From the IMG/VR virus record IMGVR_UViG_3300008110_000030, positions 150,618 through 214,617 of that record: 64,000 nucleotides of DNA. One strand, 5' to 3'. The position numbers were made by a program, and so were the translations under genes. Shown piece by piece: positions 31,883-62,100 of the stretch; position 1 is the first letter of the stretch; the number at the start of each line of letters is the position of its first letter. The notes under the pieces were generated by a model. The model did not search any database, had not been told where the DNA came from, and saw only the letters and a list, made by a program, of their open reading frames with translations.

Positions 31883-31884
31883 CT

Positions 31885-32133: not shown

Positions 32134-32208
32134 TAATCAATTTCTTCACAACTACAGCGTATTAGAATTAAGTAATACGCACTTCAGCTTATAAAAAGGA
32201 AAATAAAA

Positions 32209-32403: not shown

Positions 32404-32567
32404 TGTCTGATGCTGACGTTAAGAAAATACTTCAACTTGAACAAACTGTAAAACGATTAGAGTTTCAAGTTGCACAACTAGCTCAAAGGATTAATTATTT
32501 TGAGCGTGAACGTCAACGAATCAAAACTGATATAAATCACATTGCAGGGATCCTTAGAAAGCAATGA
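32403..32567 (+). CDS. 54-aa coiled-coil protein
   Basis: Not in the ORF track. MSDADVKKILQLEQTVKRLEFQVAQLAQRINYFERERQRIKTDINHIAGILRKQ; TAATG and ATGA overlaps on both sides. Confidence 0.75.
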   Translation: MSDADVKKILQLEQTVKRLEFQVAQLAQRINYFERERQRIKTDINHIAGILRKQ

Positions 32568-33010
32568 CATGGTTGCACGAAGGGATCACTGTTGATCAGC
32601 TTCCAGAAGAGTGTGTTGGGTTTGTATATATTATAACCAACACACTCACTGGTCGCAAATACATAGGCAAAAAATTAGCTAAGTTCGCAAAAACTACTTA
32701 CAGAGTACAAAAATTAAAAAATGGTACTAAGAAGAAAAAACGAATTAGAAGCAAAGTAGATAGCGACTGGCAAGAATATTATGGCTCAAGTGACGAACTA
32801 AACAAAGACATAGAGACATTAGGCAAAGAAAACTTCAAACGTGAAATTCTCCACTATTGCACGAGTAAGGCAGAAACTTCATATCTAGAAGCCAAAGAGC
32901 AATTTGAACGTAAGGTATTGGAAACTGATGAGTATTACAATGGCCACATTCAAGTTCGCGTCCACGGCTCACACATAATCAAAAAATTTAAGGCTCAACT
33001 TAACAGTTAA
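32564..33010 (+). CDS. Stand-alone GIY-YIG nuclease (T4 endonuclease II/Seg-like catalytic domain)
   Basis: GFVYIITNTLTGRKYIGKK...YYGSS...ENFKREIL...YLEAKEQ...YYN; 148 aa, no C-terminal DNA-binding domain. Confidence 0.85.
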   Translation: MTWLHEGITVDQLPEECVGFVYIITNTLTGRKYIGKKLAKFAKTTYRVQKLKNGTKKKKRIRSKVDSDWQEYYGSSDELNKDIETLGKENFKREILHYCTSKAETSYLEAKEQFERKVLETDEYYNGHIQVRVHGSHIIKKFKAQLNS

Positions 33011-33350
33011 TGACTCGCACAGGTTAATATCATGTGCCTAGAGACAACCCGATAATAAGGGGGACGGAAGCCTTGCCGCTGTAGCAAGCACTCAACTAGT
33101 ATCCTTAACAGGACCACGATAGCAAGCACGCCTGCTGTTTAGTTGTTTGAATAGAGTCAAAAAAGGCAAAAAGAAGGGAGAAAAACCCTACGTTTGTAAG
33201 TGTGTTAGCGTACATTTGCAAACTGCCGTCATAATGAAGACGCAACTCGAGGTACCGGATGACCGCCTCTGTAATGTTGTAACGCTAAGTGGTTGTGCTA
33301 CTCGGATAATATAGACCATTTCACTTCGCCCGCCAGGGCGAAGTGTGGCT
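33011..33350 (+). ncRNA. Candidate large structured non-coding RNA, family not recognised
   Basis: ORF-free and GC-elevated, with about ten helices and a loop-distal 7-bp pairing (33205-33211 with 33282-33288). G.U wobbles in the 13-bp stem favour the + strand. Confidence 0.65.
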
Positions 33351-41812: not shown

Positions 41813-43000
41813 ATGTCCGTATTGCTAAATGAAAAATGGCAAGATACAAAAGAGGCCCTACTAGAAGGCCTACAAGGCCACAAGCGTAGTGTCATGGGTG
41901 TGACCCTTGAAAACACTCGTAGGTATCTTGCAGAAAGTGCAACAGCTGGTTCAACCAGTGCAGGTAACGTTGCAACACTAAACCGCGTGATTCTTCCAGT
42001 AATCCGCCGTGTAATGCCAACAGTCATTGCTAACGAAATCGTTGGCGTACAACCAATGACTGGTCCAGTTGGTCAAATCCACACACTACGTATTCGTTAC
42101 GCAGATGGTGGTGATGGCGTAACAGCTGGAGATGAAGCACTAAGCCCATTCAAGATTGCGGCTGCTTATTCTGGTAACAACACAGACGCTACACCAGGTG
42201 CAAGTAGTACTGCTAGCCTAGAAGGCAACCCAGGTAAGCGTATGAGTATCCAAATCTTGAAACAAGCTGTAGAAGCCAAGACACGTAAGCTAAGTGCTCG
42301 TTGGACTTTTGAAGCTGCTCAAGATGCACAAGCTCAGCAAGGTATTGATATCGAAGCTGAAATTATGGCTGCTCTAGCACAAGAAATTACAGCTGAAATT
42401 GACCAAGAAATTCTTTCTAGCCTACGTGGTCTAGCAAGCGTTGGTCAAACTTACGACCAAGCTGCCGTATCTGGTACAGCTACATTCGTTGGTGACGAGC
42501 ATGCCGCATTGGCAGTTCAAATCAACCGTGTTGCTAACCAAATCGCTCAGCGTACACGTCGTGGTGCAGGTAACTGGGCTGTTGTGTCTAACCAGGCATT
42601 GACAATTCTACAATCTGCAACAACAAGTGCGTTTGCACGTACAACAGAAGGTACTTTCGAAGCTCCTACAAACACTAAGTTTGTTGGTACATTGAACGGT
42701 GCTATGCGTGTGTATGTTGATACATACTTAGCAGACAGTGGTAGCCAAACTATCAATGACAACCAAGTATTAGTTGGTTATAAAGGTCCTAGCGAGGCAG
42801 ATGCTGCCGCGTTCTATTGCCCATATATTCCTCTAATGAGTTCTGGTGTTGTTCTAGATCCAGCTACTTTTGAACCAGTAGTTGGCTTCATGACACGTTA
42901 TGGTTATGTAGAGTTAAACAACACTGCTTCTTCTCTAGGTAACGCGGCTGACTATCTAAGCAAGGTATCTATTACCGCTGCCAACGTTAGCTTCCAATAA
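41813..43000 (+). CDS. gp23: Major capsid protein
   Basis: IRRVMPTVIANEIVGVQPMTGPVGQI...AKTRKLSARWTFEAAQD...EITAEIDQEI...AAFYCPYIPL...FMTRYG. Confidence 0.97.
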   Translation: MSVLLNEKWQDTKEALLEGLQGHKRSVMGVTLENTRRYLAESATAGSTSAGNVATLNRVILPVIRRVMPTVIANEIVGVQPMTGPVGQIHTLRIRYADGGDGVTAGDEALSPFKIAAAYSGNNTDATPGASSTASLEGNPGKRMSIQILKQAVEAKTRKLSARWTFEAAQDAQAQQGIDIEAEIMAALAQEITAEIDQEILSSLRGLASVGQTYDQAAVSGTATFVGDEHAALAVQINRVANQIAQRTRRGAGNWAVVSNQALTILQSATTSAFARTTEGTFEAPTNTKFVGTLNGAMRVYVDTYLADSGSQTINDNQVLVGYKGPSEADAAAFYCPYIPLMSSGVVLDPATFEPVVGFMTRYGYVELNNTASSLGNAADYLSKVSITAANVSFQ

Positions 43001-43023
43001 TCTTAAGAGATTAGAAGAAAAAC

Positions 43024-43050
43024 AAAAAGCCCCAGCAATGGGGCTTTTTT
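43024..43050 (+). terminator. Intrinsic terminator after MCP
   Basis: AAAAAGCCCCA-GCAA-TGGGGCTTTTTT. Confidence 0.9.
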
Positions 43051-43066
43051 GTGAGTAAATATACTT

Positions 43067-43348
43067 GTGATGCAAGAGTATTCTATAACTAATAGTTTAG
43101 ACTGGCAACAGGTCAGATCTAGGATGTCTAAGAGTAAAGACAACTTGGGCATATTTAAACGCGATATTGATAGACTATTAAAAGGTATTGATGTTGAAAT
43201 AATTAAACTAGGTAATTTAGAAATCACCGCAAGAAACAATAAAAGCCAGTCTAGTCTAGACCGTGCGCAAGCACAATTAGACATAGTTAATCAACAAATA
43301 AAGAATTTCAATAAATTTTACATAATGGCTCTTATGACGCATAGCTAA
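43067..43348 (+). CDS. Hypothetical helical protein
   Basis: 93-aa ORF preceded by GTAAATA (43055-43061). Confidence 0.6.
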   Translation: MMQEYSITNSLDWQQVRSRMSKSKDNLGIFKRDIDRLLKGIDVEIIKLGNLEITARNNKSQSSLDRAQAQLDIVNQQIKNFNKFYIMALMTHS

Positions 43349-43389
43349 TGTTTTTTAGATACAGATAAATATCATATAAGGAAAAATAC

Positions 43390-45585: not shown

Positions 45586-45617
45586 TCCAATAAATATTAG
45601 CATGATAGGAACATGCT

Positions 45618-48572
45618 ATGGCTAATATTGGAAGAATAACAGGCCCTTTATTAAAAGACAACCTTTTAAGAAACGGTGTAGATCTTGCGTTTGAAACAGA
45701 TTTAATATATCTAAACGTCAATGAAGATCGCATTGGCCTAAAAACAGATTCCCCAGCAAGAGAATTAGAAATTGACAACCATGGTCAAACAACTGACCTA
45801 ATAGTTGACGATAATATACATCTACCTAATATTGACATAGACAATGTTAGTAATATTACCACATCAAATGGAATATTATATCTAAATGCGGCTCAACGAA
45901 TTAATGCAGTTGCACTTGCAGTTGATAATCTTAAAATAGATGCAAATAGACTATCAACAAGATTACCAAATACAGATTTAGAAATAAGACCAACTGATAG
46001 ACTGATCATCAATGCTAACACTTATATTGATGCGGGACTACATGCTACTGGAAATATTACTTTTGATGGCACTATCGTTTTTGGTAATGACGATACTGAC
46101 AACGTAACATTTGCATCAGATATCAATAGCAGTATATTTCCTAATTTAACAAATGAATATGGATTAGGTAATACAACAAATCGATGGAAGAAACTTTGGG
46201 CAAACTCAGTCAAAGGAACTACACTAACTGTAGACACAATGACTTCGCCTTCAGGCATCGACTTCCAATTAAGATTTACTAAATCATTATTCGTGTCAGT
46301 AAATGGCAGCGACAGCAATGCAGGTAATCATCAAAATGCTCCATATGGTACGTTAAAACACGCATTAAGTCAAGCAACAGCGGGCGACACTATTTTTATT
46401 TTTCCAGGAGTATACGATGAAATTACTCCGTTAACAGTTCCTGTTGGGGTTAACATAGTGGGTCTTGAAGTTCGTCAAACAATAATCATGCCAACAGAAG
46501 ACACAAAGTATAACGATGTCTTCTTACTAAACGGTGAAACAAGCATATCAGATATCACTGTCAGAGGATTTTTGTACGACAGTATGCTCAATACAGGTCA
46601 TGCTTTTAGGTTTGCTCCTGATTTTAAAGTAACTACTAAAAGTCCTTATATACAAAATGTGTCAGTTATTACTAGAGGTTCTTCAGTAACTGATGGTGTA
46701 ATTGAAATTTTAGACGGAGAATTTTCAAATAGCTATCTAGATCAAATTGCATCTGGCGGAACAGCACTAACTTCAATTTTTGAAGCGTTGGCTAACGGCG
46801 GACTATCTAGTAATTCAGGAAGTTTTAATCTTAATGATATTTTAGGATTTAATGACGGTAACGCAGGACGAGGTGCTTACATAGACGGAAGTGTGGCAGA
46901 TCCAGAGAGTAACGAAGCAAGTATGCTTTTCCACTCTTGTACATTTATAACTCCAGGTGTAGATGCATTAGTTATGACCAACGGAGTTCGTGTTGAAGTA
47001 ATTAACTGTTTTACATATTTTGCTAACATAGGATTTTATGCAACTCGAGGAGTATTAGGGTTTTCAAGCCTGAACACAAAATTTGGTGCCGAGGTTCGAA
47101 GTATTGCATCAGCAAACGTTTATGGTAATTACGGTGCAGTAGCAGATGGTGTAGATACGTTGATGTATCTAATTGGTCATAATTTTGGCTACATAGGTAG
47201 TGGCCTAGATTCCTCTAACGATAACACCCTGGCCATACAAGCTAACGAAACAGTGGAACTCAACACTGGCAAAATTTACTATACTAGTCAAGCGCAGGAC
47301 GGTGATTTTAGAGTAGGTGATCAATTCTATATTGACTTAGAAAATGGATTAGTTTCTTTTGACACTTCAGGAATTGCGGCTAACGGGGCAAGTACTCTAG
47401 CAATTCAAGGAGTTAATTCTAGACTGTTTATTGATGCTTCTAAAATTGAATTAGGTGATTTTAGACTCAGCGGTAACACTATTGAAACGCTGACCCAACC
47501 ATTTAATTTATTAGCTTCTAATGGGCAAACAGCATTTGCTGATAATGTTCAAGTTGGAAAAAATTTATTAATTACTGGTGATTTACAAACTGATGGAACC
47601 CTTACCTTTGGTAATCAGGCACAGGATACGGTTACATTTAATACTGAACTAAGTCAAAATCTAAATCCTAAGACTACTAATCTTTTTGATATTGGGGCGT
47701 CAGGAAAGATTTGGCGAGACATTTATATAGCCAGTATTCAAACGCAAGATATTAACGTTAATAATAATAGAATTGAAACTACATTAACTGACAGTAATCT
47801 TTTATTGTCAGGAAATGGCACTGGAAATACTATAGTAGAAGGTTTAGAGTTTGGTAACGGCACCATGACTTCTACAGTGCTTAACAGCAATATAGTGTTA
47901 GCTCCAGCTAGCAATTCTAATCTAATCATTGCAAGTAGTACTGCATTACGAGTTCCTAGAACTACTACTCAACTAAACAGAACTGGAGAGGTAAGATTTA
48001 ATACTTCTACTGGATTATTTGATGGATTTAGCACAGCATTAGTTGGATTTGGTGGAGTATATTCAGCAGATCGTCAAACAAGTTTATTGGCCCATCCTAC
48101 AAATAATACCTTAATATTTAGAGCAGACGACGTTGTTACAACTGTGATTGATTCTGCAGGATTAACGACCAATGCTCTTTTTACTGACAATTTACAACTT
48201 AATAATAACACGATAACCGCAATGGGATCTAACGATCTTGTACTAGTTGCTGATAGTGTAAATGTGCAGAATCTTACTATAAGTGACAATACAATCAGTC
48301 CAACTACATCAAATGCTAACTTAGAATTAGGGACTACTGGACTTGCTGGGTATGTACAATTTACTGGAACTGGAGCATTAGAGTTCCCTGTAGGTGATAA
48401 TTCTAGTAGACCCCTTAACCCTGTAATTGGAAATACTAGATTTAATCCTGAACTTCAATACACTGAAGTTTGGAGCGGCACTGCATGGATTCCAGTTACT
48501 GGTGTTGGTGAACTTTCTACGTTTGAATACGCTAACGAACAGACTACTCTTTGGTCTATCATCTTAGGTTAA
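45618..48572 (+). CDS. Large virion fibre/spike protein with beta-helix-like core; paralog of 48693..52412
   Basis: N-terminus GRITGPLLKDNLLRNGVDLAFETDL is shared with the next gene; FVSVNGSD...PYGTLKHAL, SPYIQNVSVIT; AATAAATA at 45589-45596. Confidence 0.75.
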   Translation: MANIGRITGPLLKDNLLRNGVDLAFETDLIYLNVNEDRIGLKTDSPARELEIDNHGQTTDLIVDDNIHLPNIDIDNVSNITTSNGILYLNAAQRINAVALAVDNLKIDANRLSTRLPNTDLEIRPTDRLIINANTYIDAGLHATGNITFDGTIVFGNDDTDNVTFASDINSSIFPNLTNEYGLGNTTNRWKKLWANSVKGTTLTVDTMTSPSGIDFQLRFTKSLFVSVNGSDSNAGNHQNAPYGTLKHALSQATAGDTIFIFPGVYDEITPLTVPVGVNIVGLEVRQTIIMPTEDTKYNDVFLLNGETSISDITVRGFLYDSMLNTGHAFRFAPDFKVTTKSPYIQNVSVITRGSSVTDGVIEILDGEFSNSYLDQIASGGTALTSIFEALANGGLSSNSGSFNLNDILGFNDGNAGRGAYIDGSVADPESNEASMLFHSCTFITPGVDALVMTNGVRVEVINCFTYFANIGFYATRGVLGFSSLNTKFGAEVRSIASANVYGNYGAVADGVDTLMYLIGHNFGYIGSGLDSSNDNTLAIQANETVELNTGKIYYTSQAQDGDFRVGDQFYIDLENGLVSFDTSGIAANGASTLAIQGVNSRLFIDASKIELGDFRLSGNTIETLTQPFNLLASNGQTAFADNVQVGKNLLITGDLQTDGTLTFGNQAQDTVTFNTELSQNLNPKTTNLFDIGASGKIWRDIYIASIQTQDINVNNNRIETTLTDSNLLLSGNGTGNTIVEGLEFGNGTMTSTVLNSNIVLAPASNSNLIIASSTALRVPRTTTQLNRTGEVRFNTSTGLFDGFSTALVGFGGVYSADRQTSLLAHPTNNTLIFRADDVVTTVIDSAGLTTNALFTDNLQLNNNTITAMGSNDLVLVADSVNVQNLTISDNTISPTTSNANLELGTTGLAGYVQFTGTGALEFPVGDNSSRPLNPVIGNTRFNPELQYTEVWSGTAWIPVTGVGELSTFEYANEQTTLWSIILG

Positions 48573-48594
48573 TTTCAAAAGCAACTAAATAATA

Positions 48595-48680
48595 GTACTG
48601 CAAACAATGACCAATTGTTTGCGAAATCATACTGTGGTAAACCCGCAATGCAAGGTGGTTAACCGTGAAACACGGGGTAC
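48595..48680 (+). ncRNA. Candidate structured 5' leader RNA
   Basis: Multi-branch fold between a late-promoter-like CTAAATA (48585-48591) and SD AGGAG (48682-48686). Confidence 0.55.
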
Positions 48681-48692
48681 AAGGAGTGAACG

Positions 48693-51600
48693 ATGGCTGT
48701 TGGTCGAATTTCCGGTCCGCTCTTAAAAGCAAATCTGCTTCGTAATGGGGTTGATCTGGCTTTTGAGACAGACTTATTATACTTAGATGTTAACAATCTC
48801 CGAGTTGGTGTTAAGACTAACAACCCAAGCCACGATTTACACGTAAACGGTACCACACGAACAACCACATTAGAAGTAACAAACCAATTAGACATTGGTG
48901 AAATCACTGTTACCAATAATACAATTAGCACATCTGCTAGCCAACTAACACTTAATCCTGCAGGGTTAAATCCAGTAGTTTATCAACAAAAAATTGTCGT
49001 TGATGATTTAGACATTGAAAACAATTCCATAACAGCCAATGTTGCAAATACTGACATTGAGCTAACTGCTAGCGGCACTGGACGAGTTGTAGTGTTTTCC
49101 AACACATTAGTCAACGGTGATTTACATGCCACTGGAACAATTACTGCTGATGGCGATATTCAACTTGGTGATGCTAACACTGACAATGTTGTATTCAATG
49201 CTGATGTTGACAGTGATATTATTCCTAATCTAAACATACAATATGATTTAGGTTCAACATCGAAGCGTTGGAAAGACTTATGGGCAAATGACATTCAAGT
49301 TGCCAATTTAGATATCTCAAGCAGTTTTTTACTTGATGGTGTAGACTTAACTTTACGTCCAGGAAATACTTTTTACGTTTCTGAAAACGGAAGTAATAGT
49401 AGATCAGGTACGCATCAAAATGACCCATTCTTAACAGTAAAACATGCTCTAAGCGTGGCAACTGCTGGCGACACAGTTTACATCTATTCTGGAACATACA
49501 CTGAAATCATGCCATTAACTGTGCCTGCAGGCGTTGCAATTAAGGGTGCAGGTATACGAGCAGTAACTATACAGCCAACAGTTGGAACTATCAGTAACGA
49601 TGTATTTTTGCTAAATGGCGAAACTACTATAGAAGATTTGACCGTTACTGGATTTAGATATAATAGTGTAGCAAATACTGGACACGCATTTAGATTTGCT
49701 AACAATTTTACAGTTACATCAAGAAGTCCATATATCAAAAATGTCAGTGTAATTACAACCGGCTCTACTACTTCAGTCAGCGACCCAAGAGGTTTTAACG
49801 CTGGTGATGCTGGTCGAGGTGCATACTTAGATGGCAGTGTTGCTAACGCATCAAGCAGAGAAGCCGCAATGCTTTTCCATAGTGCAACTTTTATCACACC
49901 TGGAGTGGATGCAATTACAGCAATCAACGGTGTAAGAGTTGAGTGGTTAAACTGTTTTACATATTTTGCTAACAGAGGATTTGTAGGTCTAAGCGGCTCT
50001 ACTGGATTTGCTGGCACGGGCAGTACACAACTAAGACTTGACGGTCTTACTGGAACACTTGCTACGGGACAGACTTTAACATATTATTCTACATTCCCAA
50101 CAGTGCTAGCCTCAGGCACAATTAGTAGTATTGCAAGTGATGGAAAAATTACTCTAACAGGTAAAGTTATTGGACTACAAACTGCTGTGGAGCGTGGCGG
50201 CAAAACATTAACAGCCGTAGGAAATGCTAAACTTACACAAAGCGTTAAAAAGTTTGGCACAGCAAGTTTGATACTAGACGGCACAGGCGACTACGTTACT
50301 GTGGCATCCAGCGATGATTTTGGGTTTGGTACAGGCAATTTTACTATAGAAGGGTGGTTCTATAAAAATACGGCCACACAGATGGTTCTCTTTGATATGA
50401 GAACAACATCGTCTCAGTCTTCAATTTATGTTGAATCAAACGCAGCCGGTAATTTACGATTATTTGTCAGCGGAGCATATAGATTAACATCAAGTAATGC
50501 TATGCCAACTGGCGAATGGACACACGTGGCTATATCTCGTGTCAGCGATGTAACAAGATTTTTTATTAATGGTGTTGTTTCAACTAACACTTATGCTGAT
50601 ACTAACGATTATGGTTCTGCAAAACCGCTAGTTCTAGGAGCAAGTTTTACAGGTACTACTGCTGTTAATGGATATATTGATGATTTTAGAGTCAGCAAAG
50701 GCATTGGAAGATACACAACAACATTCACTGCGCCAACAAGTATACATCCTAACGATAGCAACACAAAACTTTTAGCAAGATTTGATGGTGCAAATAATTC
50801 TACATCATTCACAGATGAAACACTACTAATTCAAGACATTAGAAGTAGTGGAGGAGCTACTGCTTCTAAGATTACATTGGTAGATCATAGCGATTTTGGA
50901 GTAGAAGTTCGTAGTATTGGCAGTGCAAATGTCTATGGTAATTACGGCGCAGTTGGTGACGGTGTTGGCGTAATCATGTATCTAATAGGGCACAACATGG
51001 CCTACATTGGTACTGGACTACGAAGTGACAATGATGTTACCTATGTTAATCAACCAAACGAAGTAGTTGAAACAAACGGCGCAAAAATTTATTATAGTAG
51101 TGTTGACCATAAGGGCGACTTTAGAGTTGGAGATTTATTTTATGTTAATCAACAGACTGGTGAAGTAACATTTACCAGTGCAAACTTCAACATCACCAGT
51201 ACTCAAGGTCTAACATTCACTAACGGTAGTAATGTCACATACATTGACGGCAATGAAATTGACACTGGCAACTTAAAATTAAGTGGTAACACTTTAGAAT
51301 CTGTTACTGGACCATTAAATCTTGCATCAGCCAATGATCAAATTAACTTATTAAACAACGTATCCATAGCAGGAAACTTGGATGTAGTTGGTAATGTTAC
51401 TATTGGTGGTAACATTATTCTTGGTGACGAGATCACTGACAGTATCAATTTTGTTGCAGGAATTAATAGTAATCTAATACCAAATATTACTAATACTTAC
51501 GATATTGGTACTACTGATTTACGTTGGAAAGACTTATACGCTAATAGAGCATTAGTTGGTAATATCAGTATTACTGGCAATCAAATAACGACAACCAATA

Positions 51601-52412
51601 CTAATGGAAATTTAGAATTAGTTGCTAACGGTACAGGTCATGTTGCCTTAGAAGGATTTGTAGTACAAGAAAATCAAATTAGTACCACTACTGGCGACAT
51701 GACATTACAGCCAAGCGGTACTGGTATAGTTGATATCAATTCTATAAAGAGTGTGGTAATACCAGTTGGCACTGAGATTGACAGACCAAGTGTACCACAA
51801 ACTGGTATGGTTCGTTTCAATACCACAATGGGTAGATTTGAAGGATACAACGGAACAAATTGGGTATTTTTAGATGGCGTAACTGATTTAGACGGAAATA
51901 CAAAAGTAACAGCAGAATTAACTCCAGGTGCGAATGACGATACAATACGTTTTTACACCAATGGTGTAGTTGTTGCTGATTTAAATTCTACTAGATTGAA
52001 TGTAACTAAGGTTGTAGTTGACGACATTGAAATAAATGGATCATCTATTACCAATACCGCTGGCGGCAACTTGTCATTACAAACAGCAGGCGCTGGTAAT
52101 GTTGTAGTTGAAAACTTCAACGTAAATGGCAGTTCCATTACAAACACAGTGTCAAATGCAGTAACAACACTTACTTCAACTGGTACTGGGTATGTTAGAA
52201 TTGCTGGTCAAGGCGGATTTGTTGTTCCTTCTGGTTTACAATCATTTAGACCCACACTGCCAGTAACTGGCATGATGAGATTTGATACTAGTTTAGGTCG
52301 TATGGAAGTTTACGATGGCACTGACTGGATTTCTGTTGCAGGAGCGGCAACTGGTGTGACAAGAGCAGAAGTAGAAGATTTAGCATTGCAATACGCAATT
52401 GCATTAGGATAA
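48693..52412 (+). CDS. Large virion fibre/spike protein with inserted LamG/ConA-like domain
   Basis: Same scaffold as the 984-aa protein plus KFGTASLILDGTGDY...FTIEGWFY...WTHVAISR...GYIDDFRVSKG. Confidence 0.8.
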   Translation: MAVGRISGPLLKANLLRNGVDLAFETDLLYLDVNNLRVGVKTNNPSHDLHVNGTTRTTTLEVTNQLDIGEITVTNNTISTSASQLTLNPAGLNPVVYQQKIVVDDLDIENNSITANVANTDIELTASGTGRVVVFSNTLVNGDLHATGTITADGDIQLGDANTDNVVFNADVDSDIIPNLNIQYDLGSTSKRWKDLWANDIQVANLDISSSFLLDGVDLTLRPGNTFYVSENGSNSRSGTHQNDPFLTVKHALSVATAGDTVYIYSGTYTEIMPLTVPAGVAIKGAGIRAVTIQPTVGTISNDVFLLNGETTIEDLTVTGFRYNSVANTGHAFRFANNFTVTSRSPYIKNVSVITTGSTTSVSDPRGFNAGDAGRGAYLDGSVANASSREAAMLFHSATFITPGVDAITAINGVRVEWLNCFTYFANRGFVGLSGSTGFAGTGSTQLRLDGLTGTLATGQTLTYYSTFPTVLASGTISSIASDGKITLTGKVIGLQTAVERGGKTLTAVGNAKLTQSVKKFGTASLILDGTGDYVTVASSDDFGFGTGNFTIEGWFYKNTATQMVLFDMRTTSSQSSIYVESNAAGNLRLFVSGAYRLTSSNAMPTGEWTHVAISRVSDVTRFFINGVVSTNTYADTNDYGSAKPLVLGASFTGTTAVNGYIDDFRVSKGIGRYTTTFTAPTSIHPNDSNTKLLARFDGANNSTSFTDETLLIQDIRSSGGATASKITLVDHSDFGVEVRSIGSANVYGNYGAVGDGVGVIMYLIGHNMAYIGTGLRSDNDVTYVNQPNEVVETNGAKIYYSSVDHKGDFRVGDLFYVNQQTGEVTFTSANFNITSTQGLTFTNGSNVTYIDGNEIDTGNLKLSGNTLESVTGPLNLASANDQINLLNNVSIAGNLDVVGNVTIGGNIILGDEITDSINFVAGINSNLIPNITNTYDIGTTDLRWKDLYANRALVGNISITGNQITTTNTNGNLELVANGTGHVALEGFVVQENQISTTTGDMTLQPSGTGIVDINSIKSVVIPVGTEIDRPSVPQTGMVRFNTTMGRFEGYNGTNWVFLDGVTDLDGNTKVTAELTPGANDDTIRFYTNGVVVADLNSTRLNVTKVVVDDIEINGSSITNTAGGNLSLQTAGAGNVVVENFNVNGSSITNTVSNAVTTLTSTGTGYVRIAGQGGFVVPSGLQSFRPTLPVTGMMRFDTSLGRMEVYDGTDWISVAGAATGVTRAEVEDLALQYAIALG

Positions 52413-53170: not shown

Positions 53171-56100
53171 ATGGCCGAATTTAAACTAGGTAGACTAAGA
53201 TTCGTATGGAAAGGCACATGGACTGCCACTACCGCATACGTAAAAGATGACATTGTTCGTCACGGTGGTAAAACATACGTTGCTAAAACAGCACATACAT
53301 CAGCATCAAATTTTTATACAGATTCAGATGCAAGCAGATGGGAACTAATGTCAGATGGTATTCAATGGATTAACACTCCTTGGACAGCCAGCACCGTCTA
53401 TAAAGAAGGTGACATAGTTCGCTATGGCGGGAAAGTTTATCTATGTATAGATGGTCATACTGCTAACGGAACACAAAACGGCGGATTTTATACAGATCTA
53501 GGAATCAACAAGTGGAGTTTATTTGTTGATGGAATTACTGCTGTTGGTGATTGGGCAGTTAGCACTTACTATAAGTTGGGCGACATTGCCAAATACAATG
53601 GTATTACTTATATTTGTGTACAGGCGCACACTTCTGCATCTTCAATTGCTAGTGGTCTAGAAGCAAACATTAATGATTGGGATGTCTTTGCTGAGGGTAT
53701 TAAATATCGAGGTGCTTGGTCAGGCACAACTCGTTACATTCTAAATGACGTTGTTAAATTTGGTGCTAGTTTATATATTTGCTCTCTGCCACACACTAGT
53801 ACTAGTGTATTTGAAGATAACAAATGGTTCCTATTCACTTCTGGATTTGAATTTGGCGGAACATGGTCTAATACAACAGAATACCAAATTGGTGATGTAG
53901 TTCGATATGGTGGTTATTTGTATGTAGCCATTTCTAGAAATACTGGTCAACTTCCAACAGGAACATCAGGTAACTGGTCATTGTTGTCCATGGCATACAG
54001 CACTAACGGAACATACAGTAACGTTGCTACATATAAGCCAGGTGAAGTTGTTAGACATGGTGGTAACACATTTGTTGCTAACCAAGAAATTGGCGTTGGT
54101 GAAACTCCAGTCAGCGATGTTGCCAAATGGGATCTTCTAGTTTCAGGTGTTCGTTGGACAGGCGACTGGACAGATACCCCAACTGAAGTAACTTATAAAA
54201 TCAACGATCTAGTAAAATATGTTGCTACAACGTATGTTTGCGTAACAGAACACGATCCTACAAGTTTGAATCGTCCTGATTTAGACGCACTTGGAACAAA
54301 TTGGATTCCTTTTGCAGAAGGCGCAGACGTTAACGTTATGGTTCGTCGTGGCGACTTGGTTACTCGTAATGCTATACAAAACATTCGACTACCAGTAGGT
54401 GACGCTGGACAAATTTTAAAAGTACAAAATAATGGTTTTGATTTAACATGGGGTAACGTTGGTAGTATTACCAACATTTATTACGTTAGTACTGAAGGTC
54501 TTGACGGCCCAACACGTGGTACCTCAATTGATCAACCATTTAGAACAATCAAGTATGCTTGTGATTTTGTAAGATTACAAAATCCTGCAACGTTTAATAA
54601 TCCAGCTGTTATTAACGTTAAGACTGGCGTATATGACGAAGTATTCCCAATTAGTCTTCCTAAATTTACTTCTCTTGTTGGTGATGAACTACGTATGAGT
54701 ATTGTTCAGCCAACACCTGCAACTAGTCACTTGGATAAGTTTAGAATGCGTGATAGTACAACTATTCGTAACTTTACTTTCCGTGGTGCTACTGGCGCAC
54801 CAGGAGGCGGATTTACTGAAGTTAATCAATACGGAACAAGAAGACCAACAGGTGGTGCATGGTGCTGTCTAGATCCAGGCACAGGTCCTAATGATGAATC
54901 CGCTTGGGTAGGTGCTCGTTCTCCATACATCCAAAACGTAACAACGTTTGGTGATAATTGCGTAGGGCAAAAGATTGACGGGGCATTACACAACGGTGGT
55001 AACAAATCTATTACATCAAACGACTTTACTCAGGTTATGAGTGATTCTATTGGTGCATGGTGTACTAACCAAGGTCGTGCAGAACTTGTTTCTGTGTTTA
55101 CATACTATAGCTACATTGGTTACTTGTGTGAAAACGGCGGTGTTATTCGTGCTACTAACGGTAACAACTCATATGGTACATATGGTTCTGTATCTGAAGG
55201 CGTTGACCCAACAGAAATTTCTCGTACTGCAACTGTAGACAACAGAAGATTAAATGCTATTGTTGACGTTACGCAAACAGACGGCGAAAGCGTTTTATAT
55301 TTAGAATACTTGAATGCTGGTGAAGACTATACTTCAGCAACTTATAATTTTACTGGATCAGGACTAAGTGCAAGTCTTAGTGCAACTGCTGATATTGCCA
55401 CAGGCGGTGTAGCAGAAGTTCGAGTACTAGCTGACGGTGACAGTTATGTTGGCGTACAAAATAACGCACAGTTAGGTGACACAACTTACATTAGGTTGGG
55501 GGCATCAGATATCCAAATTACAAACGGATATAACGGAATGCGTATTCTGTTAATTGACGGAACTGGAACTGGTCAGTATGCTTATATTAGTGCATTTGAT
55601 GGCGGTAGTAAAGACTTAACAGTTAACAAAGAAACATTCACACCATTGACAGTGACTGAAGTTGCTTCAACTGGTAATTTGTTTACTACAGCTGACACTA
55701 GCACCTTAACACTAAACATGCCAATTAATTTCCAAGGCAGTGTAGTAGGTAACGTGGTAGCAGATACTCTTTATTATGTTAAATCTATACCAAACGGTAC
55801 AACATTCACTGTTAGTGCAAGTATTAGTGGCGGCGTAGCTGGTACAGTATTCAACCCAGGAACTGCTACAGGTAATATGGTATTACATGCAGTTGGTTGG
55901 GACGTATTTGCTGACAATATTATAACACCTATTACTGGAGCAACACAAGCTAATCCAGTTGTAATCACTACAGGCACCCCACATGGACTGAAATCTACAT
56001 GGAACGCTAGAATTAGTGGTGTTACTGGTATGACTCAGTTGAACGGTAACACATACTACGTTGACGTTTTGTCAAGCACAACTTTTGCATTATATTCAGA

Positions 56101-59100
56101 TTTTGGTCTAACAACTACAATTAACGGAACAGCATATGGTGCATATTCCGCCGGTGGTTCAGTTAACGGCAAGCAAAGTATTGCTCCATTCCTAAACACA
56201 ACTACTAGATATGTAATTGAACCACGTCCAGTGTTCTCAACAGGTTCAGGCGCAAGTGCAACTCCTGTCAGAACATTAGGTATTGACACATTTACAATTG
56301 TTAATGGTGGTAAAGGATATACCGATGCACCTACTCCAATTATTGCAGGTCCAGACACTGTTGCAGATGCGGTTAATGCCTCAGCGACTGTTACTATCTC
56401 TGGCCCAGTAGACACCATAACTGTATATTCTAGAGGCGGCGGTTATACTAGCGCACCTACTTTACAATTTGTAGGTGGTGGTCTACCAACAGACTACAGT
56501 GACTTTGTAGCTGAAGCAGTTGTTGTATTAGGAGATGCAATATTTGTTCCAGGTACTTCAAGATTTTATGAAGTAACAGTTGCTGGAACACTTAGTCTAA
56601 CAGCACCAACACATACTAGCGGCACTTCTACTAACGGAACTGCTACTTTAAGATATTTAGGTAGAAGAGCTAGTGCTAATGCTAATATGACTAATATTAT
56701 TAAAACATTAGTCTTAAACAATGGCGGTGTTGGATATACTAGTACACCTAGCGTACAAGTAACTGGTGCTAGCGGAACAGGTGCAATTGTTTCCGCAACA
56801 ATCAGTCAAGTTATTAATGAAATTACTCTTGACATTCCTGGTGCTGGTTATAATACAGCGCCTACAGTCACTTTGGTTGGTGGAGATCCTTTAGAATTTG
56901 CAACAGCGGTTGCAGTTTTAGATGCAACACTAACTGATGTTACAATTGTTGAAGGTGGTAACGGATACGTTCCTGCGTCAACAACAGTGACTGTATCTGC
57001 CCCACCAGCAGGCGGTACAACTGCAACTGCTGAAGCAGTAATTGACTTTGGTGCATACATTCCTGGTATTACCCCAGGAGCAGTTACTAGTATTAATATT
57101 CTAACCGCAGGTAGCGGCTATGCAACATCGCCATCAATTCTTATTAATGGTGTTGGTAGTGGAGCAAGTGCCCAAACAATTATTACTGGTATTATTGATA
57201 GAATTGATGTAACAAATCGCGGTAGAGGATATGAATCCACTCCAACAGTTAGTATTACTGGTGGTGGTGGTGGTGGCGCAAGTGCTACTGCTTCAAGAAC
57301 AGGTTCAGTTAACACTATTACAATTATTGATGGTGGTAGTGGATTTACAGGAAATCCTAGTTTAGAATTTATTGGCGGCGGCTTATCTAACGGAAGCCTA
57401 AATCATGCACAAGCTATAGTTTCAGCAATTGATTCAGTGGTTGCAACAGTCACACTTGTAGATGCTGGTGATAATTACACATCAAATCCTGCAATTTCTG
57501 TAACAGGTGGTGGCGGAACTGGACCAACCCTTAGAGCTAGAATTAATGGTCAAGTTAGAACTATTACCGTAACTGATCCAGGTAGTGATTATAGTGGTGT
57601 TGATGCTCCAGTTATTGCCTTTAGTGGTGGTAGAGTATATAAATCACCAGTAGCTGGTTTAAGATATTATACAAATGCCAGTGCGCTAACAGCAATTGGT
57701 ATTAGTCAATTAACACAAACTCTAGCAGGTATTGCTAGAGCAACTGTATTGGCTAAGAATGTTGTTGCTAACACAAACCCTGTAACTTCATATCAACAAG
57801 CGGTAACACGTACTGCTGGCGGCGTAGGATATACACAGCCAACAAATATTGGTTTTGCAATTGACAGTTGGATGAACGGTGTCTATTACACTATTGAAAA
57901 CGGTCAAAATCATGTTAATGCCGCAACAGTATTGCGACTAAACAGACGTTTTTTAAGAACAGACTCAATGCAGTTCTTAGCAACTAACTATCCAGCTGTA
58001 GCTGATGCAACTTGGAGTAGAGACATTGGTTTGATCGTTGATGCTATTGCAAAAGATATTGAAACTCGTGGAGTTGTTAATTCTTCTACAGTTGCAATTA
58101 AGCAAGCATTTATATCAGCTAGAGCTTCTGAACCACTAGCAGTGGCAGGACTTATGGATTTCTTAAGAGATAGTATTGTTAGTATTGTTCAAAACATAGT
58201 ATTAACTCCTCAAATTGATGGAACTACTACTTGGGAAGGTTTATGGGTTGACGCCAAGAGCTATCAGACCAATGACGTTGTATTCTTTGCAGGAAAAACA
58301 TACACTGCTCTAAGTACCCATTTCTCTAACACATTGTTCAGTGTTGATTTGGCAGCAGGTCGCTGGGTTGAAAATACCAATGGACAACAAACATTAGATC
58401 TTCCACTAGAACCAGGTGCTATAACTGCTACTGAAAATTTAGGAAACTACATCAAGGGTATATTACAATATGCTCCTGCTAACGCATCTTGGACAGCGGC
58501 AGCAACATTGTTGACAAGTAACCAATCCTATATTAAAGCAGAAGTTATTGCTTATATAAACAATACATTTGAAGATTTCGTTTACAACCAAGCATTGTGC
58601 GCCCGTGACATTGGATTTATTTTAGATGCAGTGGCCTATGACTTACTCAATGCTCTAATAGCAGAAGCAACTGCAACTGCTACTACAACTGGTGTTATAT
58701 CAAAACTTACAGTTGTTAATGGCGGTGAAGGTTATAGCGGTGGTGTACAAATTGCAATGGCAGGTGGTGGCTCAAGTGGAGCACCTACAGTTAATGCAAC
58801 GGCTACCGCTATTAGGAATCCGTTAACTGGTGCAATTACTGGCTTTACAATGACTAACAAAGGTAAAGGATATGCTTCTTTACCAAGCGTGACTATTACT
58901 CCTGATACAGGAAGTGGTGTAGTTGCTAGAAGTCGTGTGGTTGGTGGTAACGTAAGTAAAGTTAACATTATTCACCCAGGTAGCGGCTATACTTCAGGAC
59001 CATTCTTAAGATTGATTGATCCAAACAACAGTGGCGATGCTGCCTTCCAAGTACGTGTTGCAGACGGTGTATTAAAACAACCTAGATTTACAGGTAGAGG

Positions 59101-62100
59101 AACAGGATTCTTGACCGCTGCCGTTGAAATTAGTGGTGACGGATTTGCTGAAATTACACAAACAGGTAGCTTTATCTATGTTAAGAATTTAACAAATATT
59201 CCTACCCCAGGTGCAAACATACAGTTTGAAGATAATGACACGTTCTATAAATTAGTTACAGTTCGTGAAGTTATTGGACCACAAGGTACAATTAATGCTA
59301 GAGCAATTTTACTAGCCAACAAAGCATTTGTACAAGCAGAAGTTATTAGCTATCTAGATAACTTTACTTTTGACAGTGTAAAATGCTCACGAGATATTGG
59401 TTATATTATTGACGCATTGGCTGATGACTCGTTAACTGGTTCTAACCAAAGATTGTTAGCAGTTAGATGGCAATATGCTAGAGGATTATACACTACATTT
59501 GATCGTCAAAGAATGCAAACAGCTTATGTATTAGAATATTTGCAGACAGAAATTAACCAATTATTCAACTATGCTGATAATGATATTTCAAGTACGCTGA
59601 ATGATTTGATTGAATGGATTAAGAACGAAGAATATTATAAAGATATTAAAGTTCCTCTAAATCCACCTATTGGATATGACGCAGAAAATGATGCTGGATC
59701 TACAGTATTAACTGCTAACCGTGAATTTATTGCAGGTAATGCATTAAGAAGATTTATTAATAATGCTCCTGCTGGTTCTTATACAGTTAATAATAACATT
59801 TGGTTACAAGAATTTAGACAAGTAGTTGACAGTATTGCATACGACTTGATGTATACTGGAAATCAACAAGTTATTGAACATAGCTCAACTTTTTACAGTG
59901 GAGTGAATTTTATCCTTGCTGGTTATACAGGCGATACAAGTGTAGTAAAAGCTGAGTTTGTAAACACATTAACTTATATCAAAACATTAGTACAAGATGT
60001 TGTACAAAACAACGTAGTAGCAGTACTACAGTCTGGTTATACAGTTAGCGGTACAGTTGCAGTAGTTAATGCATCAACTGGTGTTGTAACAGGTCCTGCA
60101 CAAGATAGATCCTTAAGTGCAGGTGATACTGGTACTGCATTCCGTGTAGGCGGCTTATGCGACGAGTTTATTTCAATTATCAATAACAGCCCAACAACTA
60201 TTGGGGTAACTGTTACTGCGACTGCAACTTCCTTTGCTGGATTTGCTAGTGGTGAAGTTGCTAAGAGAACTAAACTATTAAATGCTAAACCAACATTGCG
60301 TACTCAAGCAACAACTTGGATGACTGACAAGTTTGTTAATTTTGAATATGATCAAGACAAATGTTCAAGAGACGTTGGAATCATTGTACAAGCAATTGCT
60401 GACGACATATATGGTGACGTAGCTAAGTCTGTTGAAGCAGGTCAGCGTTATTATGCGGCCACTGCGGCACTTGTAATTAGTGCGCAAAAGCCACAGACTA
60501 TTGCAGCCATTAATTGGATTGGTGAAGTTGTACAACGTGTGACTAACAACGTTACATGGGTAAGAACACAAAACCGTGTGTTCCAAGAACGATTCCCAAG
60601 TTTAACTGGCATGAGCGAAGCATTGCCAGTACTACAAGAACGTGTAAACATTATTAAACGAATTGTTGAATATGGCGCATTCTTTGACCAAGTTAAACAG
60701 ATTCTTTTAGATAATAAGACATACATACAGGCTGAGGTAGTAAGTTTTGTTGATGCCACTTATGAGAACTTGAATTATAGTAGATCATTATGTTCTAGAG
60801 ATGCAGGATTAATTGTTGATGCCTTGATATACGACGTATATGGTGGGTTAAGCAGAAGTCGTGAAGCTGGTTTACGTTACTACCAAAGTGCTAGTGCGTT
60901 AGCCGCTATTACTGGAGATCAACTAACTCCAACAACAACTGCAATTAACTATCTAAGACAATTAGCACAAGCGGTAATTATAAATCAAAATCCGTCAGTG
61001 CAATTCCAAGAAAATACTTTAAGAACAAGTATCAATACAAACACAGGATCAGTTGCGTTCGTAGCAGTTACACCTGGATCTAATTACAGCCAAGGCACAA
61101 CTATCACAACTGCTACTGGTGGTAGCGGATCAATAACTGGCGAAATTGACGCAGTTATTGATGTTGCTACTGGCAGTATCGTTGAAGCAACAGTTGTTAA
61201 CGGTGGTTCAGGATTTAACAATGCGCCAAGTTTGACAATAACAAAACCTACTGCCGCAAGTAAAACTTATGTAAGTATTGTAGGAACAACACTGACATTG
61301 AGTGATACCGTTGGAATATTTGTTGGTATGGAAGTTAGTGGTACTGGATTTACTAGCAACCAGCGTGTAGTGTCTATTAACAGTAACGGAATTGCAGTTG
61401 AACTTAGTGCAACTTCTGATGCTACTCCTGCAGGAAATATTACATTTACTGATATTGGTAGCGGAGCAAGTGCAACTGCTATCTTAGGAGTTGCTTATGA
61501 CCCAGCCAAAGTTGCAGATCTATTAGTTGATGAAAAAATTGACGAAGGAACAGCAGCCTTGTTGGCAGTGATTGAGGGCGGTCCAAGTGTATTGCCTGCT
61601 GGTAGATATGCGGCTCGCTTACAAGTTAGTCCAGAAATTCCAATTCAAATTAGTCCTCCACATGACACTAACACTGTGGTACGTAGTAAGTACTCACAAG
61701 TTCGTTTAACTGGTCACGACTTCTTGAATATTGGTACAGGTAATAAGAACGACACTAACTATCCAGGTATTCCATTAAATGCTCCAGATCAAGCTAACGA
61801 AGTTGTTGAAGTTGGCGGTGGTCGTGTATTCTACACTTCAACTGACCAAGACGGTAACTTTAGAGTTGGTGAACTATTCCGCGTTGAACAGTCCACTGGT
61901 ATTGCTACATTGAATGCTGATGCGTTTAACTTGAGTGGTTTGAACGAACTATCACTTGGTGGTGTTACACTTGGTGGATCAGGCGCTGTTATTCGTGAAT
62001 TCTCAACAGACAGTACTTTCTTTGCTAACAGTGACAACATTGTTCCAACACAGAAAGCGATTAAGACTTACATCCAAAGCGCATTAGGTTCTGGTGGTGG

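What the first reader, a model, noticed from the sequence alone, without database searches (positions are those of the whole stretch)
48585..48692. Compact multi-stem leader RNA between late promoter and SD of the LamG fibre gene
Seen: GTAC(T)/(G)GTAC (48595/48677) closes a junction containing GCAAACAAT-GACCA-ATTGTTTGC (48600-48622), AATCAT/GTGGTT (48625/48655) enclosing TGTGG/CCGCA, and CCGTG-AAA-CACGG (48663-48675). It ends one base before AGGAG. The loop ACCA could alternatively pair with TGGT. No other structural gene here has such a leader. Inference: a cis-regulatory RNA (riboswitch-like, protein-binding or self-cleaving) tuning expression of one of two paralogous fibres.
Basis: partly seen in the sequence, partly recalled or inferred. 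Interest (0 to 1): 0.6.

Follow-up and report, generated by a model that had tools for sequence, protein, structure and literature searches.

The report
Pseudoknotted leader RNA of phage fibre gene
The 120-base gap before one of two tandem baseplate/fibre genes of an uncultured freshwater T4-like phage encodes a conserved, pseudoknotted 5' leader RNA, absent from Rfam, whose first hairpin loop base-pairs with codons 3-5 of the gene and so probably sets how much of that protein is made.

Summary
More than 180 distinct versions occur in IMG/VR phage contigs. Every one lies between a TAAATA late-promoter core and the Shine-Dalgarno (SD) sequence of the same gene family (N-terminus MA[VI]GRI[ST]GPLLK), once per locus and once in this 214.6-kb record.

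Covariation supports:
- P1, a 5' hairpin (48599-48623);
- P2, AACC:GGUU, which crosses S1 and forms an H-type pseudoknot;
- P3, optional hairpin(s) inserted in relatives;
- P4 (48663-48675), which comes in two sequence flavours.

New here: the P1 loop GACCA pairs with UGGUC in codons 3-5 (48701-48705). Three independent lineages carry the compensatory change GUCC:GGAC. Leader-bearing genes encode Gly-Arg as GGUCGN in 180/186 cases, against 5/55 in leaderless paralogs. SD and AUG therefore sit in the loop of a long-range pseudoknot, as in the E. coli rpsO operator.

There is no Rfam match, no terminator and no copy in cultured phages. I read it as a cis-acting translational control element. The transcription start, the effect on translation and any effector remain untested.

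The parts
48586..48591 (+). TAAATA core of a T4-type late promoter. The expected transcription start is about 6 nt downstream, that is 1-3 nt before P1.
   Evidence: Present at a fixed 7-8 nt before P1 in all 27 unique upstream regions retrieved by protein similarity alone. The same motif lies 11-49 nt (mostly 24-49) before other genes of the window. The T4 late promoter is TATAAAT (PMC3037559). The start site itself is inferred, not mapped.
48599..48623 (+). P1, the 5'-terminal hairpin: 9-10 bp stem (48599-48608 with 48614-48623) and apical loop GACCA.
   Evidence: All 10 modelled pairs show changes on both sides across 100 loci. In 180 unique leaders the median is 10 bp and the minimum 7, with mean dG -9.2 against -3.9 kcal/mol for shuffles and 140 distinct stem 10-mers. 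The many G-U pairs place the structure on the + (mRNA) strand.
48609..48613 (+). P1 apical loop GACCA, the 5' strand of the long-range helix with codons 3-5.
   Evidence: 96.7% of cells are paired with UGGUC in a structure-blind MAFFT alignment of 148 leaders. Single-side changes are wobble-preserving (GGCC, GACU). Compensatory GUCC:GGAC occurs in three lineages.
48631..48638 (+). Near-invariant core ACUGUGGU. U48633-G48634-U48635 (and possibly G48636, G48637) form the 5' strand of S1.
   Evidence: S1 is 100% paired in 100 and in 148 sequences. U-A changes to A-U and to C-G, and U.G changes to U-A and to C-G. These columns were not part of the covariance model's structure.
48639..48644 (+). 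AAACC, the 5' strand of P2, followed by junction nucleotide C48644.
   Evidence: P2 pairs show A-U/G-C/C-G/U.G at the middle position, U-A/C-G at the end position and C-G to U-A at the inner positions. Four of five pairs (A4) and five of five (A5) have double changes.
48645..48648 (+). GCAA. G-C-A is the 3' strand of S1 (CCGCA, 48643-47, if the helix runs to 5 bp).
48649..48656 (+). Loop L3 of the pseudoknot (UGCAAGGU). About half of the relatives carry one or two extra hairpins (P3) here.
   Evidence: 100 of 182 unique leaders are 'long' forms. 96 of those have 1-2 predicted hairpins in the insert, and 93 inserts are distinct.
48657..48661 (+). GGUUA, the 3' strand of P2.
48663..48675 (+). 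P4 hairpin CCGUG-AAA-CACGG ('type 1' flavour). Relatives carry either this or GGG-ACAGGAU-CCC ('type 2').
   Evidence: 93 unique type 1 and 89 unique type 2 leaders. Compensatory changes within each type are CCG/CGG to CGG/CCG and GGG/CCC to GGC/GCC.
48682..48686 (+). Shine-Dalgarno AGGAG, single-stranded in the model, 6 nt after P4.
   Evidence: No conserved anti-SD complement was found in the leader (inspection).
48700..48706 (+). Target of the P1 loop inside the ORF: UUGGUCG (codons 3-5, GUU GGU CGA). Core pairs are G48609-C48705, A48610-U48704, C48611-G48703, C48612-G48702 and A48613-U48701.
   Evidence: Leader-bearing genes encode Gly-Arg as GGUCGN in 180/186 cases, leaderless paralogs in 5/55. 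The first Gly is GGU in 170/175 cases, the second Gly of the same peptide in 145/175. 149 of 162 leaders allow at least 5 contiguous pairs. The duplex energy in the window is -8.2 kcal/mol.
48693..52412 (+). Regulated gene: a 1239-aa baseplate-wedge/fibre-like virion protein with a LamG (Laminin_G_3) insert at residues 529-668.
   Evidence: Pfam PF13385, E = 2e-19. PHROG 'baseplate wedge subunit' families, E down to 1e-194.
45618..48572 (+). Upstream tandem paralog (984 aa) without this leader. It serves as context and as an internal control.
   Evidence: BLASTP 48%/37% identity. Its own ATAAATA lies 27 nt before its ATG. It encodes Gly-Arg as GGAAGA.

Best explanation
This is a cis-acting translational control element in the roughly 95-nt 5' untranslated leader of the LamG-bearing baseplate/fibre paralog, transcribed from the gene's own late promoter. 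The RNA folds into a 5'-terminal hairpin (P1), a compact H-type pseudoknot (S1 UGU[GG]:[CC]GCA crossed by P2 AACC:GGUU, with optional P3 hairpins in its third loop) and a hairpin P4 just before the SD. The apical loop of P1 (GACCA) then pairs with codons 3-5 (UGGUC). This makes a second, long-range pseudoknot whose connecting loop contains the SD and the AUG. That is the architecture of the E. coli rpsO operator, where a hairpin loop pairs downstream and the ribosome binds the SD on a long loop of the pseudoknot. I propose that this closed form limits or gates translation initiation. On this view the near-invariant pseudoknot core and the sequence-conserved P4 loop act as the scaffold, or as the binding site for a trans-acting factor, most likely a phage protein, that stabilises the closed form. 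The result would be to set the amount of this paralog relative to its leaderless neighbour. Shown here: the helices, the loop-codon pairing, the strand, the single copy and the exclusive gene association. Inferred: the transcription start, the direction and size of the effect on translation, and the existence and identity of an effector.
For: One leader precedes every homolog of this gene down to about 53% protein identity. More than 180 unique versions came from four independent anchors. There is exactly one hit per locus in 100 loci and one in the whole record. On the model-fitted alignment, 91.5% of cells are paired against 71.1% in shuffles, and the covariation score is 0.49 against 0.15, with 0/500 shuffles as high; slid controls give 35-43% paired. 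S1 and the loop-codon helix were not part of the model and are 100% and 96.7% paired, the latter on a structure-blind MAFFT alignment. Compensatory GUCC:GGAC occurs in three separate lineages: L199; L282/L462/L473; L466. No GUCC occurs with GGUC, and no GACC with GGAC. The GGAAGA lineage carries UCUUUY at the loop. Synonymous-site conservation of GGUCGN is 180/186 against 5/55 in leaderless paralogs, and the third base of the Arg codon is free (T 70, C 57, A 53). The SD is unpaired and P4 ends 6 nt before it. Precedents are rpsO (PMC3985624) and the T4 gene 32 pseudoknot operator (PMC3014915).
Against: There is no experimental datum. The transcription start is unmapped; metatranscriptome contigs cover 48665-48865 and a relative's leader but cannot show ends or exclude DNA carry-over. 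About 10% of unique leaders have a P1 loop with no complement to codons 3-5, one (L202) has no P1 at all, and the GGGC lineages show no compensation. The long-range helix is therefore dispensable in some phages. In genes with a 3-codon N-terminal extension the target lies at +18 rather than +9, which weakens a purely steric block. No mutually exclusive 'open' fold that frees or hides the SD was found. Much of the GGUCGN against GGUAGA contrast could stem from a single ancestral difference between the paralog clades.
Confidence: 0.52

Rival explanations
1. It is a small-molecule riboswitch. The invariant pseudoknot core would be an aptamer, and ligand binding would decide whether the P1 loop can clamp codons 3-5.
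For: The core has features typical of aptamers. Nucleotides in junctions are near-invariant (ACUGUGGU, CC, GCAA) across more than 180 variants while the stems covary. The topology is a pseudoknot. A variable peripheral hairpin (P3) sits in one loop. The CC and GG dinucleotides vary only in ways that keep pairing with two possible partners.
Against: No Rfam riboswitch matches at E <= 10 for three variants. The regulated gene is a virion protein with no metabolic logic. No alternative fold hides the SD or forms a terminator. The two sequence flavours of P4 are easier to explain by a co-evolving macromolecular partner.
Confidence: 0.13
2. It is a constitutive structural leader with no effector. 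A 5'-terminal hairpin and compact fold would protect the late mRNA from 5'-end-dependent decay or endonucleases, and would keep the ribosome-binding site unpaired whatever the upstream context, including read-through from the upstream paralog.
For: P1 sits within 1-3 nt of the expected 5' end in all leaders. The SD is always single-stranded. No switch was detected. The T4 literature shows that mRNA structure protects against RegB and that late mRNAs are nuclease targets (PMC3014915).
Against: A stabiliser needs neither an invariant pseudoknot core, nor conserved P4 loop sequences, nor a covarying loop-codon pairing. Other late genes of the same phage manage with leaders of roughly 5-45 nt.
Confidence: 0.2
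3. It is a new class of self-cleaving ribozyme that processes the 5' end of the mRNA.
For: It is a small pseudoknotted RNA with invariant unpaired nucleotides in a phage genome. Several ribozyme classes are common in phages (own knowledge).
Against: No hammerhead, twister, twister-sister, pistol, hatchet, HDV-like or other Rfam ribozyme model matches. The RNA already begins at the promoter, so no processing is needed. Pairing of the P1 loop with the ORF implies that P1 stays attached to the mRNA.
Confidence: 0.04
4. It is not an RNA structure. The conservation would reflect a DNA-level signal (promoter-proximal element, recombination site between paralogs) or a chance palindrome.
For: The single-sequence fold is no better than shuffles. 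The 48-nt core is the most conserved DNA stretch among co-occurring relatives; its depth spikes about 20-fold in a lake metagenome.
Against: Stems change sequence completely but keep pairing. G-U pairs are frequent and exist only on the + strand (they would be A-C on the other strand). Crossing helices and loop-codon covariation cannot be explained by duplex DNA.
Confidence: 0.02

Closest known systems
E. coli rpsO (ribosomal protein S15) translational operator
   Same: A hairpin loop pairs with a downstream sequence to make a pseudoknot, and the SD and AUG lie on the long connecting loop. The operator works at translation initiation, by entrapment of the 30S subunit (PMC3985624).
   Different: There is no sequence or gene relationship. 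Here the downstream strand lies in codons 3-5, and about 80 nt of extra structure (a second pseudoknot and P4) sits between the two strands. No binding protein is known. An alternative double-hairpin state has not been shown.
T4/T2/RB69 gene 32 mRNA 5' pseudoknot operator
   Same: It is an H-type pseudoknot in the 5' leader of a T4-type phage mRNA, used for translational control (PMC3014915, PMC535899).
   Different: The gene differs (ssDNA-binding protein against a late virion protein), and so does the sequence. The gene 32 element nucleates cooperative protein binding over an unstructured A+U-rich RBS. Here the RBS is enclosed by a loop-codon helix and flanked by a hairpin.
Pseudoknotted riboswitch aptamers (preQ1-I/II, SAM-II/V, fluoride, guanidine-III)
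   Same: Small H-type pseudoknots with invariant loop and junction nucleotides, placed directly upstream of an SD.
   Different: None of their Rfam models matches. In those riboswitches the SD usually forms part of the pseudoknot, and here it does not. The gene context is structural, not metabolic or transport.
Unnamed candidate structured RNAs from IMG/VR (Fremin, Bhatt and Kyrpides 2023), e.g. those upstream of GP20 and GP32
   Same: The data source is the same (IMG/VR), and so is the kind of object: a covarying motif within 25 nt upstream of a phage gene (PMC10690425).
   Different: That paper's text does not mention baseplate, tail or fibre genes (0 occurrences). Its supplementary tables are not held here, so I could not check whether this motif is among its 8,495 entries. 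No structure, pseudoknot or loop-codon pairing has been described for it.

Membership tests
Any Rfam 15 family (4227 models, including all curated riboswitches, ribozymes and phage motifs) | A covariance-model match at or near the gathering score | tested here: not met
   There was no match at E <= 10 for the window leader or for a type-2 long relative. A type-1 long relative gave only two chance-level hits, CRISPR-DR18 at 15.6 bits against a gathering score of 50 and SNORD39 at 12.1 against 35.
rpsO-like pseudoknot translational operator (works-like comparison) | A hairpin loop pairs with sequence at or after the start codon, leaving the SD and AUG in the connecting loop | tested here: met
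   GACCA:UGGUC is 96.7% paired, and compensatory GUCC:GGAC occurs in three lineages.
rpsO-like pseudoknot translational operator (works-like comparison) | It is bound by a repressor protein (autogenous) that traps the initiation complex | not testable with these tools
   No binding partner can be inferred from sequence, and complex prediction does not handle RNA.
rpsO-like pseudoknot translational operator (works-like comparison) | Equilibrium with an alternative, mutually exclusive fold | tested here: inconclusive
   S1 extended to 5 bp (UGUGG:CCGCA) and P2 share one or two C residues. Both readings are 99-100% and 88% paired respectively. They may coexist as one pseudoknot or alternate.
Riboswitch (generic) | A conserved ligand-binding aptamer with covarying stems and invariant junctions | tested here: inconclusive
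   The architecture is compatible, but no ligand is known or testable.
Riboswitch (generic) | An expression platform that switches SD access or termination | tested here: not met
   There is no terminator and no conserved anti-SD. Only the loop-codon helix could serve this role.
Intrinsic terminator of the upstream gene | A G+C-rich hairpin followed by a U tract | tested here: not met
   Zero terminator-like sites in 48300-48900. P1 is followed by GAAAUCAU.
T4-type late promoter | A TATAAATA-like element at a fixed short distance upstream of the transcript | tested here: met
   The TAAATA core lies 7-8 nt before P1 in all unbiased homologs. The same motif precedes other genes of the window. 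Its activity was not tested.
tRNA / tmRNA-like element | A cloverleaf detected by ARAGORN | tested here: not met
   Zero genes in the window.

The most novel reading that the evidence does not exclude
The invariant double-pseudoknot leader is a new class of ligand-sensing RNA (a riboswitch) in phage late mRNAs. On this reading it senses a host metabolite or a nucleotide signal and uses an unusual expression platform: a 5' hairpin loop that clamps codons 3-5. The phage would thereby switch between two receptor-binding or baseplate paralogs according to host state.
Probability: 0.12. Interest if true: 0.85.

Novelty: new member of a known kind. Interest (0 to 1): 0.66.

Why it matters
Post-transcriptional control of late virion genes in T4-like phages is almost unexplored. 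A 2010 review calls the gene 32 pseudoknot possibly the only viral pseudoknot used for translational autoregulation (PMC3014915). This report describes a second, unrelated pseudoknot leader. It is widespread in uncultured aquatic (chiefly freshwater) T4-like phages, and it is attached to only one of two tandem baseplate/fibre paralogs, the one carrying a lectin-like LamG domain. That placement suggests the phages tune the ratio of alternative host-recognition or baseplate proteins at the level of translation. The element is small (about 130 nt including its target). It has a clear, mutationally testable long-range pairing with natural compensatory variants, and it needs no cultured host for in vitro or reporter tests. 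It is also a candidate new Rfam family.

Tried and rejected
- Rfam at gathering and permissive thresholds gave nothing at the locus.
- tRNA/tmRNA scan: none found.
- Terminator scan: none found.
- RNAalifold on a plain MAFFT alignment recovered only P2, because the P1 stems are not alignable by sequence. I replaced it with two rounds of covariance modelling.
- My first idea, that the P1 loop GACC pairs with GGU of the core (ACUGUGGU), is 97.6% 'paired' but shows no double change. In the GUCC lineages the core stays UGGU while the codon changes to GGAC. The coding-region partner is therefore preferred. A decoy role for the core is not excluded.
- Leader peptide: the small ATG frame in the window's P1 is not conserved (inspection).
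- SD sequestration: I found no conserved anti-SD.
- CsrA-type reading of the type-2 P4 loop ACAGGAU and of the J1/2 sequence CAGGAC (own knowledge). Type 1 has no GGA motif and one type-2 variant has AGA, so this cannot be general. I did not pursue it.
- Cultured phages: no DNA match. Protein matches are partial only, to cyanophage 'gp7' proteins over residues 180-400. No isolate is available.
- Prokaryote genomes: 3 of 120 pattern hits are real, and all three are phage contigs binned into MAGs.
- Metatranscriptomes hold only short contigs and give no ends, strand or level.
- Supplement of Fremin et al. 2023: not held.
- A scan for long-form leaders with non-U Gly codons found nothing.
- Protein structure and complex tools were not used. 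They do not bear on the RNA question.

Full report
SETTING. The window is the last 64 kb of a 214.6-kb IMG/VR virus record. It is a T4-like myovirus: the major capsid protein (Pfam Gp23, E = 4e-100) lies at 41813-43000. Near-identical DNA occurs mainly in lake and freshwater metagenomes, across 15 studies. The finding lies in the 120-nt gap 48573-48692 between two tandem paralogs. The first is 45618-48572 (984 aa). The second is 48693-52412 (1239 aa). They are 48% identical over the N-terminal 486 aligned residues and 37% over the C-terminal alignment. Only the second carries a Laminin_G_3 domain, at residues 529-668 (E = 2e-19). Both match PHROG 'baseplate wedge subunit / tail fibre' families.

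CHECK OF THE OBSERVATION. On the single sequence the fold is unremarkable: MFE -30.1 kcal/mol, z = -1.33. Rfam finds nothing here even at E <= 10. ARAGORN finds no tRNA, and there is no terminator.

RELATIVES.
- A protein-based search with the first 400 residues returned 64 IMG/VR loci at 50-91% identity. Their upstream regions share one layout in every case except the most distant orthologs (L050/L064, 50-52% identity), which have a short plain leader.
- The shared layout is: TAAATA, then 7-8 nt, then a hairpin of free stem sequence with loop nGACCAn, then 6-8 nt, then ACUGUGGU, YAACC, N, GCAA, a short or long variable segment, GGUUR, a hairpin, 3-20 nt, AGGAG and ATG.
- Pooled and de-duplicated, the scans give 182 parsed unique leaders. 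Every genuine one precedes a gene that starts MA[VI]GRI[ST]GPLLK or a close variant.
- The leaderless paralogs in the same loci have TAAATA about 20-30 nt before their start codons.
- There is no DNA match in 50,697 GenBank phage records. Protein matches there are partial, to cyanophage 'gp7' proteins.
- Of 120 pattern hits in prokaryote genomes, three are real. All three lie upstream of the same gene on contigs binned into MAGs.

STRUCTURE. I built a covariance model from 15 gap-free seeds. I searched 100 diverse loci with it, rebuilt the model from the 77 matches, and searched again. The second model finds exactly one match in each of the 100 sources and one in the whole record.

On that alignment, 91.5% of cells are paired against 71.1% in shuffles. 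The covariation score is 0.49 against 0.15, with 0/500 shuffles as high. Slid partners give 35-43% paired. Helix by helix:
- P1: all 10 pairs change on both sides.
- S1 (UGU:GCA) is not part of the model's structure, yet it is 100% paired. U-A changes to A-U and to C-G, and U.G changes to U-A and to C-G.
- P2 (AACC:GGUU): four of five pairs show double changes, including C-G to U-A at the inner pairs.
- P4 comes in two flavours, CCG-UGAAACA-CGG (93 unique) and GGG-ACAGGAU-CCC (89 unique), with compensatory changes within each.

A structure-blind MAFFT alignment of 148 leaders gives the same picture for S1 and P2.

S1 and P2 cross, so together they form an H-type pseudoknot. Both readings are almost fully paired. 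I cannot tell a single compact pseudoknot from two alternating folds.

About half of the leaders carry one or two extra hairpins (P3) in the third loop. The window has the short form.

GTAC/GTAC is paired in 60% of cells and AATCAT/GTGGTT in 68%, neither with consistent covariation. The 5' GTAC also lies at about -3 to +1 of the expected start. The frequent G-U pairs place the structure on the mRNA-sense strand.

THE NEW ELEMENT: LOOP-CODON PAIRING. The P1 loop GACC(A) is complementary to (U)GGUC, which encodes Gly-Arg at codons 4-5, preceded by the last base of codon 3. The evidence is as follows.
1. On the MAFFT alignment 96.7% of cells are paired, and the one-sided changes are wobble-preserving (A to G, C to U).
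2. Leader-bearing genes use GGUCGN in 180 of 186 unique cases, with a free third base (T 70, C 57, A 53). The 55 leaderless paralogs mostly use GGUAGA (36) and use GGUCGN only 5 times.
3. The first Gly codon is GGU in 170/175 cases, the second Gly of the same peptide in 145/175.
4. All five non-GGUC cases in the first data set lack a GACC loop. Two of them have loop GUCC with codon GGAC.
5. A targeted scan for non-U Gly codons added a third independent lineage with GUCC:GGAC (L466, a close relative of the window's own subfamily) and more members of the L282 lineage.
6. The GGAAGA lineage has UCUUUY at the loop or 3' strand, which is complementary to GGAAGA with one or two wobbles.

In the GUCC lineages the core ACUGUGGU is unchanged. 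In the window up to 7 contiguous pairs are possible (UGACCAA with UUGGUCG, -8.2 kcal/mol). 149 of 162 leaders allow at least 5.

There are exceptions. About 10% of unique leaders have no complementary loop, L202 has no P1 at all, and the GGGC lineages show no compensation.

HOW IT LIKELY WORKS. The transcript should begin 1-3 nt before P1. This rests on the TAAATA spacing and on the same motif lying 11-49 nt (mostly 24-49) before other genes here, against 107 nt for this gene; it is an inference. P1, the pseudoknot and P4 fold as the RNA emerges. The SD and AUG stay single-stranded. When codons 3-5 emerge, the P1 loop can clamp them, which encloses the ribosome-binding site in the loop of a long-range pseudoknot.

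This is the layout of the rpsO operator. There the loop of hairpin 1 pairs downstream, the ribosome binds the SD on a long loop, and S15 traps the complex (PMC3985624). It also recalls the gene 32 pseudoknot operator of T4-type phages (PMC3014915).

I therefore favour a translational control element that sets the output of this paralog. The invariant core and the sequence-conserved P4 loop would act as the scaffold or as the binding site for a factor, more likely a protein given the two P4 flavours. The rivals are a small-molecule riboswitch, a constitutive stabiliser or insulator, a new ribozyme, and a DNA-level signal. They are weighed in their own sections of this report.

EXPRESSION DATA. 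Three metatranscriptome runs hold small parts of the stretch as assembled contigs. One contig is identical over 48665-48865. Another comes from a relative and spans its P3, P4 and start codon. Contigs cannot show ends, strand or level, and DNA carry-over is possible, so the transcription start remains open.

NOVELTY. The motif is not in Rfam 15. It is not in cultured phages. It is not mentioned in the text of the one large catalogue of IMG/VR structured-RNA candidates (PMC10690425), whose tables I could not read. It may therefore be listed there without a name. As an object it is a new family within a known kind, structured cis-regulatory mRNA leaders and pseudoknot operators. Its unusual feature is a covarying hairpin-loop to codon pairing across about 90 nt.

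LIMITS.
- The alignments from the covariance model lean towards the model's helices (P1, P2, P4). S1 and the loop-codon helix are free of that bias.
- The pattern scans fixed the bases they searched for. Statements on invariance of the core rest on the P4-anchored and protein-anchored sets, and statements on P4 rest on the core-anchored set.
- The sequences are related, so the shuffle counts are not probabilities.

Noticed in passing
window 33012-33148 (+): A full-length match to Rfam RF01718, Polynucleobacter-1 RNA (83.9 bits, gathering score 37, E = 2.5e-16), lies directly after the ORF 32564-33010. It is the only Rfam family in the window.
   Followed up: no
window 45590-45620 (+); leaderless paralogs in L114, L117, L221, L231 and others: The upstream paralog has a 21-nt leader that can form a 6-bp hairpin (AGCAUG/CAUGCU) with its SD-like AGGAA in the loop, ending at the ATG. 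Many leaderless paralogs in other loci show the same design, e.g. CUGUAU-AGGAG-AUACAG.
   Followed up: partly
window 48610-48710, DNA run X1: Depth jumps from about 6 to about 120 over the leader core. Separate 47-48-nt contigs cover only 48631-48678. The core is shared nearly unchanged by many co-occurring related phages and collapses the assembly graph.
   Followed up: partly
window 3973-18216 (-) and 53171-63316 (+): Two giant ORFs of 4747 aa and 3381 aa flank the structural module. The second starts 44 nt after a TAAATA motif.
   Followed up: no
L362:3106-3290, L399, L440: Three 'prokaryote genome' contigs carry the leader plus its gene. One is a 335-kb contig of a Neomarinimicrobiota MAG and another a 29-kb contig of a Dehalococcoidia MAG. 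They are probably phage DNA binned into MAGs.
   Followed up: partly
relatives with type-2 P4, e.g. L009:2887-3003, L024:2429-2539: The type-2 P4 loop ACAGGAU and the segment before the core (CAGGAC / CAGGGUC) both carry GGA in a CsrA-site-like context (own knowledge). Type 1, as in the window, has none, and one type-2 variant has AGA.
   Followed up: no
relatives L461, L464, L467, L468, L470, L474: A sublineage has Gly-Arg as GGGCGN, a G-rich SD region (GGGGGAAG), enlarged P4 loops in some members (ACGUGUGAU) and a branched or different P1 with no complement to the codons. It may have lost or replaced the loop-codon interaction.
   Followed up: partly
window 43001-43389 and 31883-32563 (+): Two long gaps without ORFs of 100 aa or more: 389 nt after the major capsid gene and 681 nt before 32564. 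I did not examine them for structure beyond the Rfam gathering scan.
   Followed up: no
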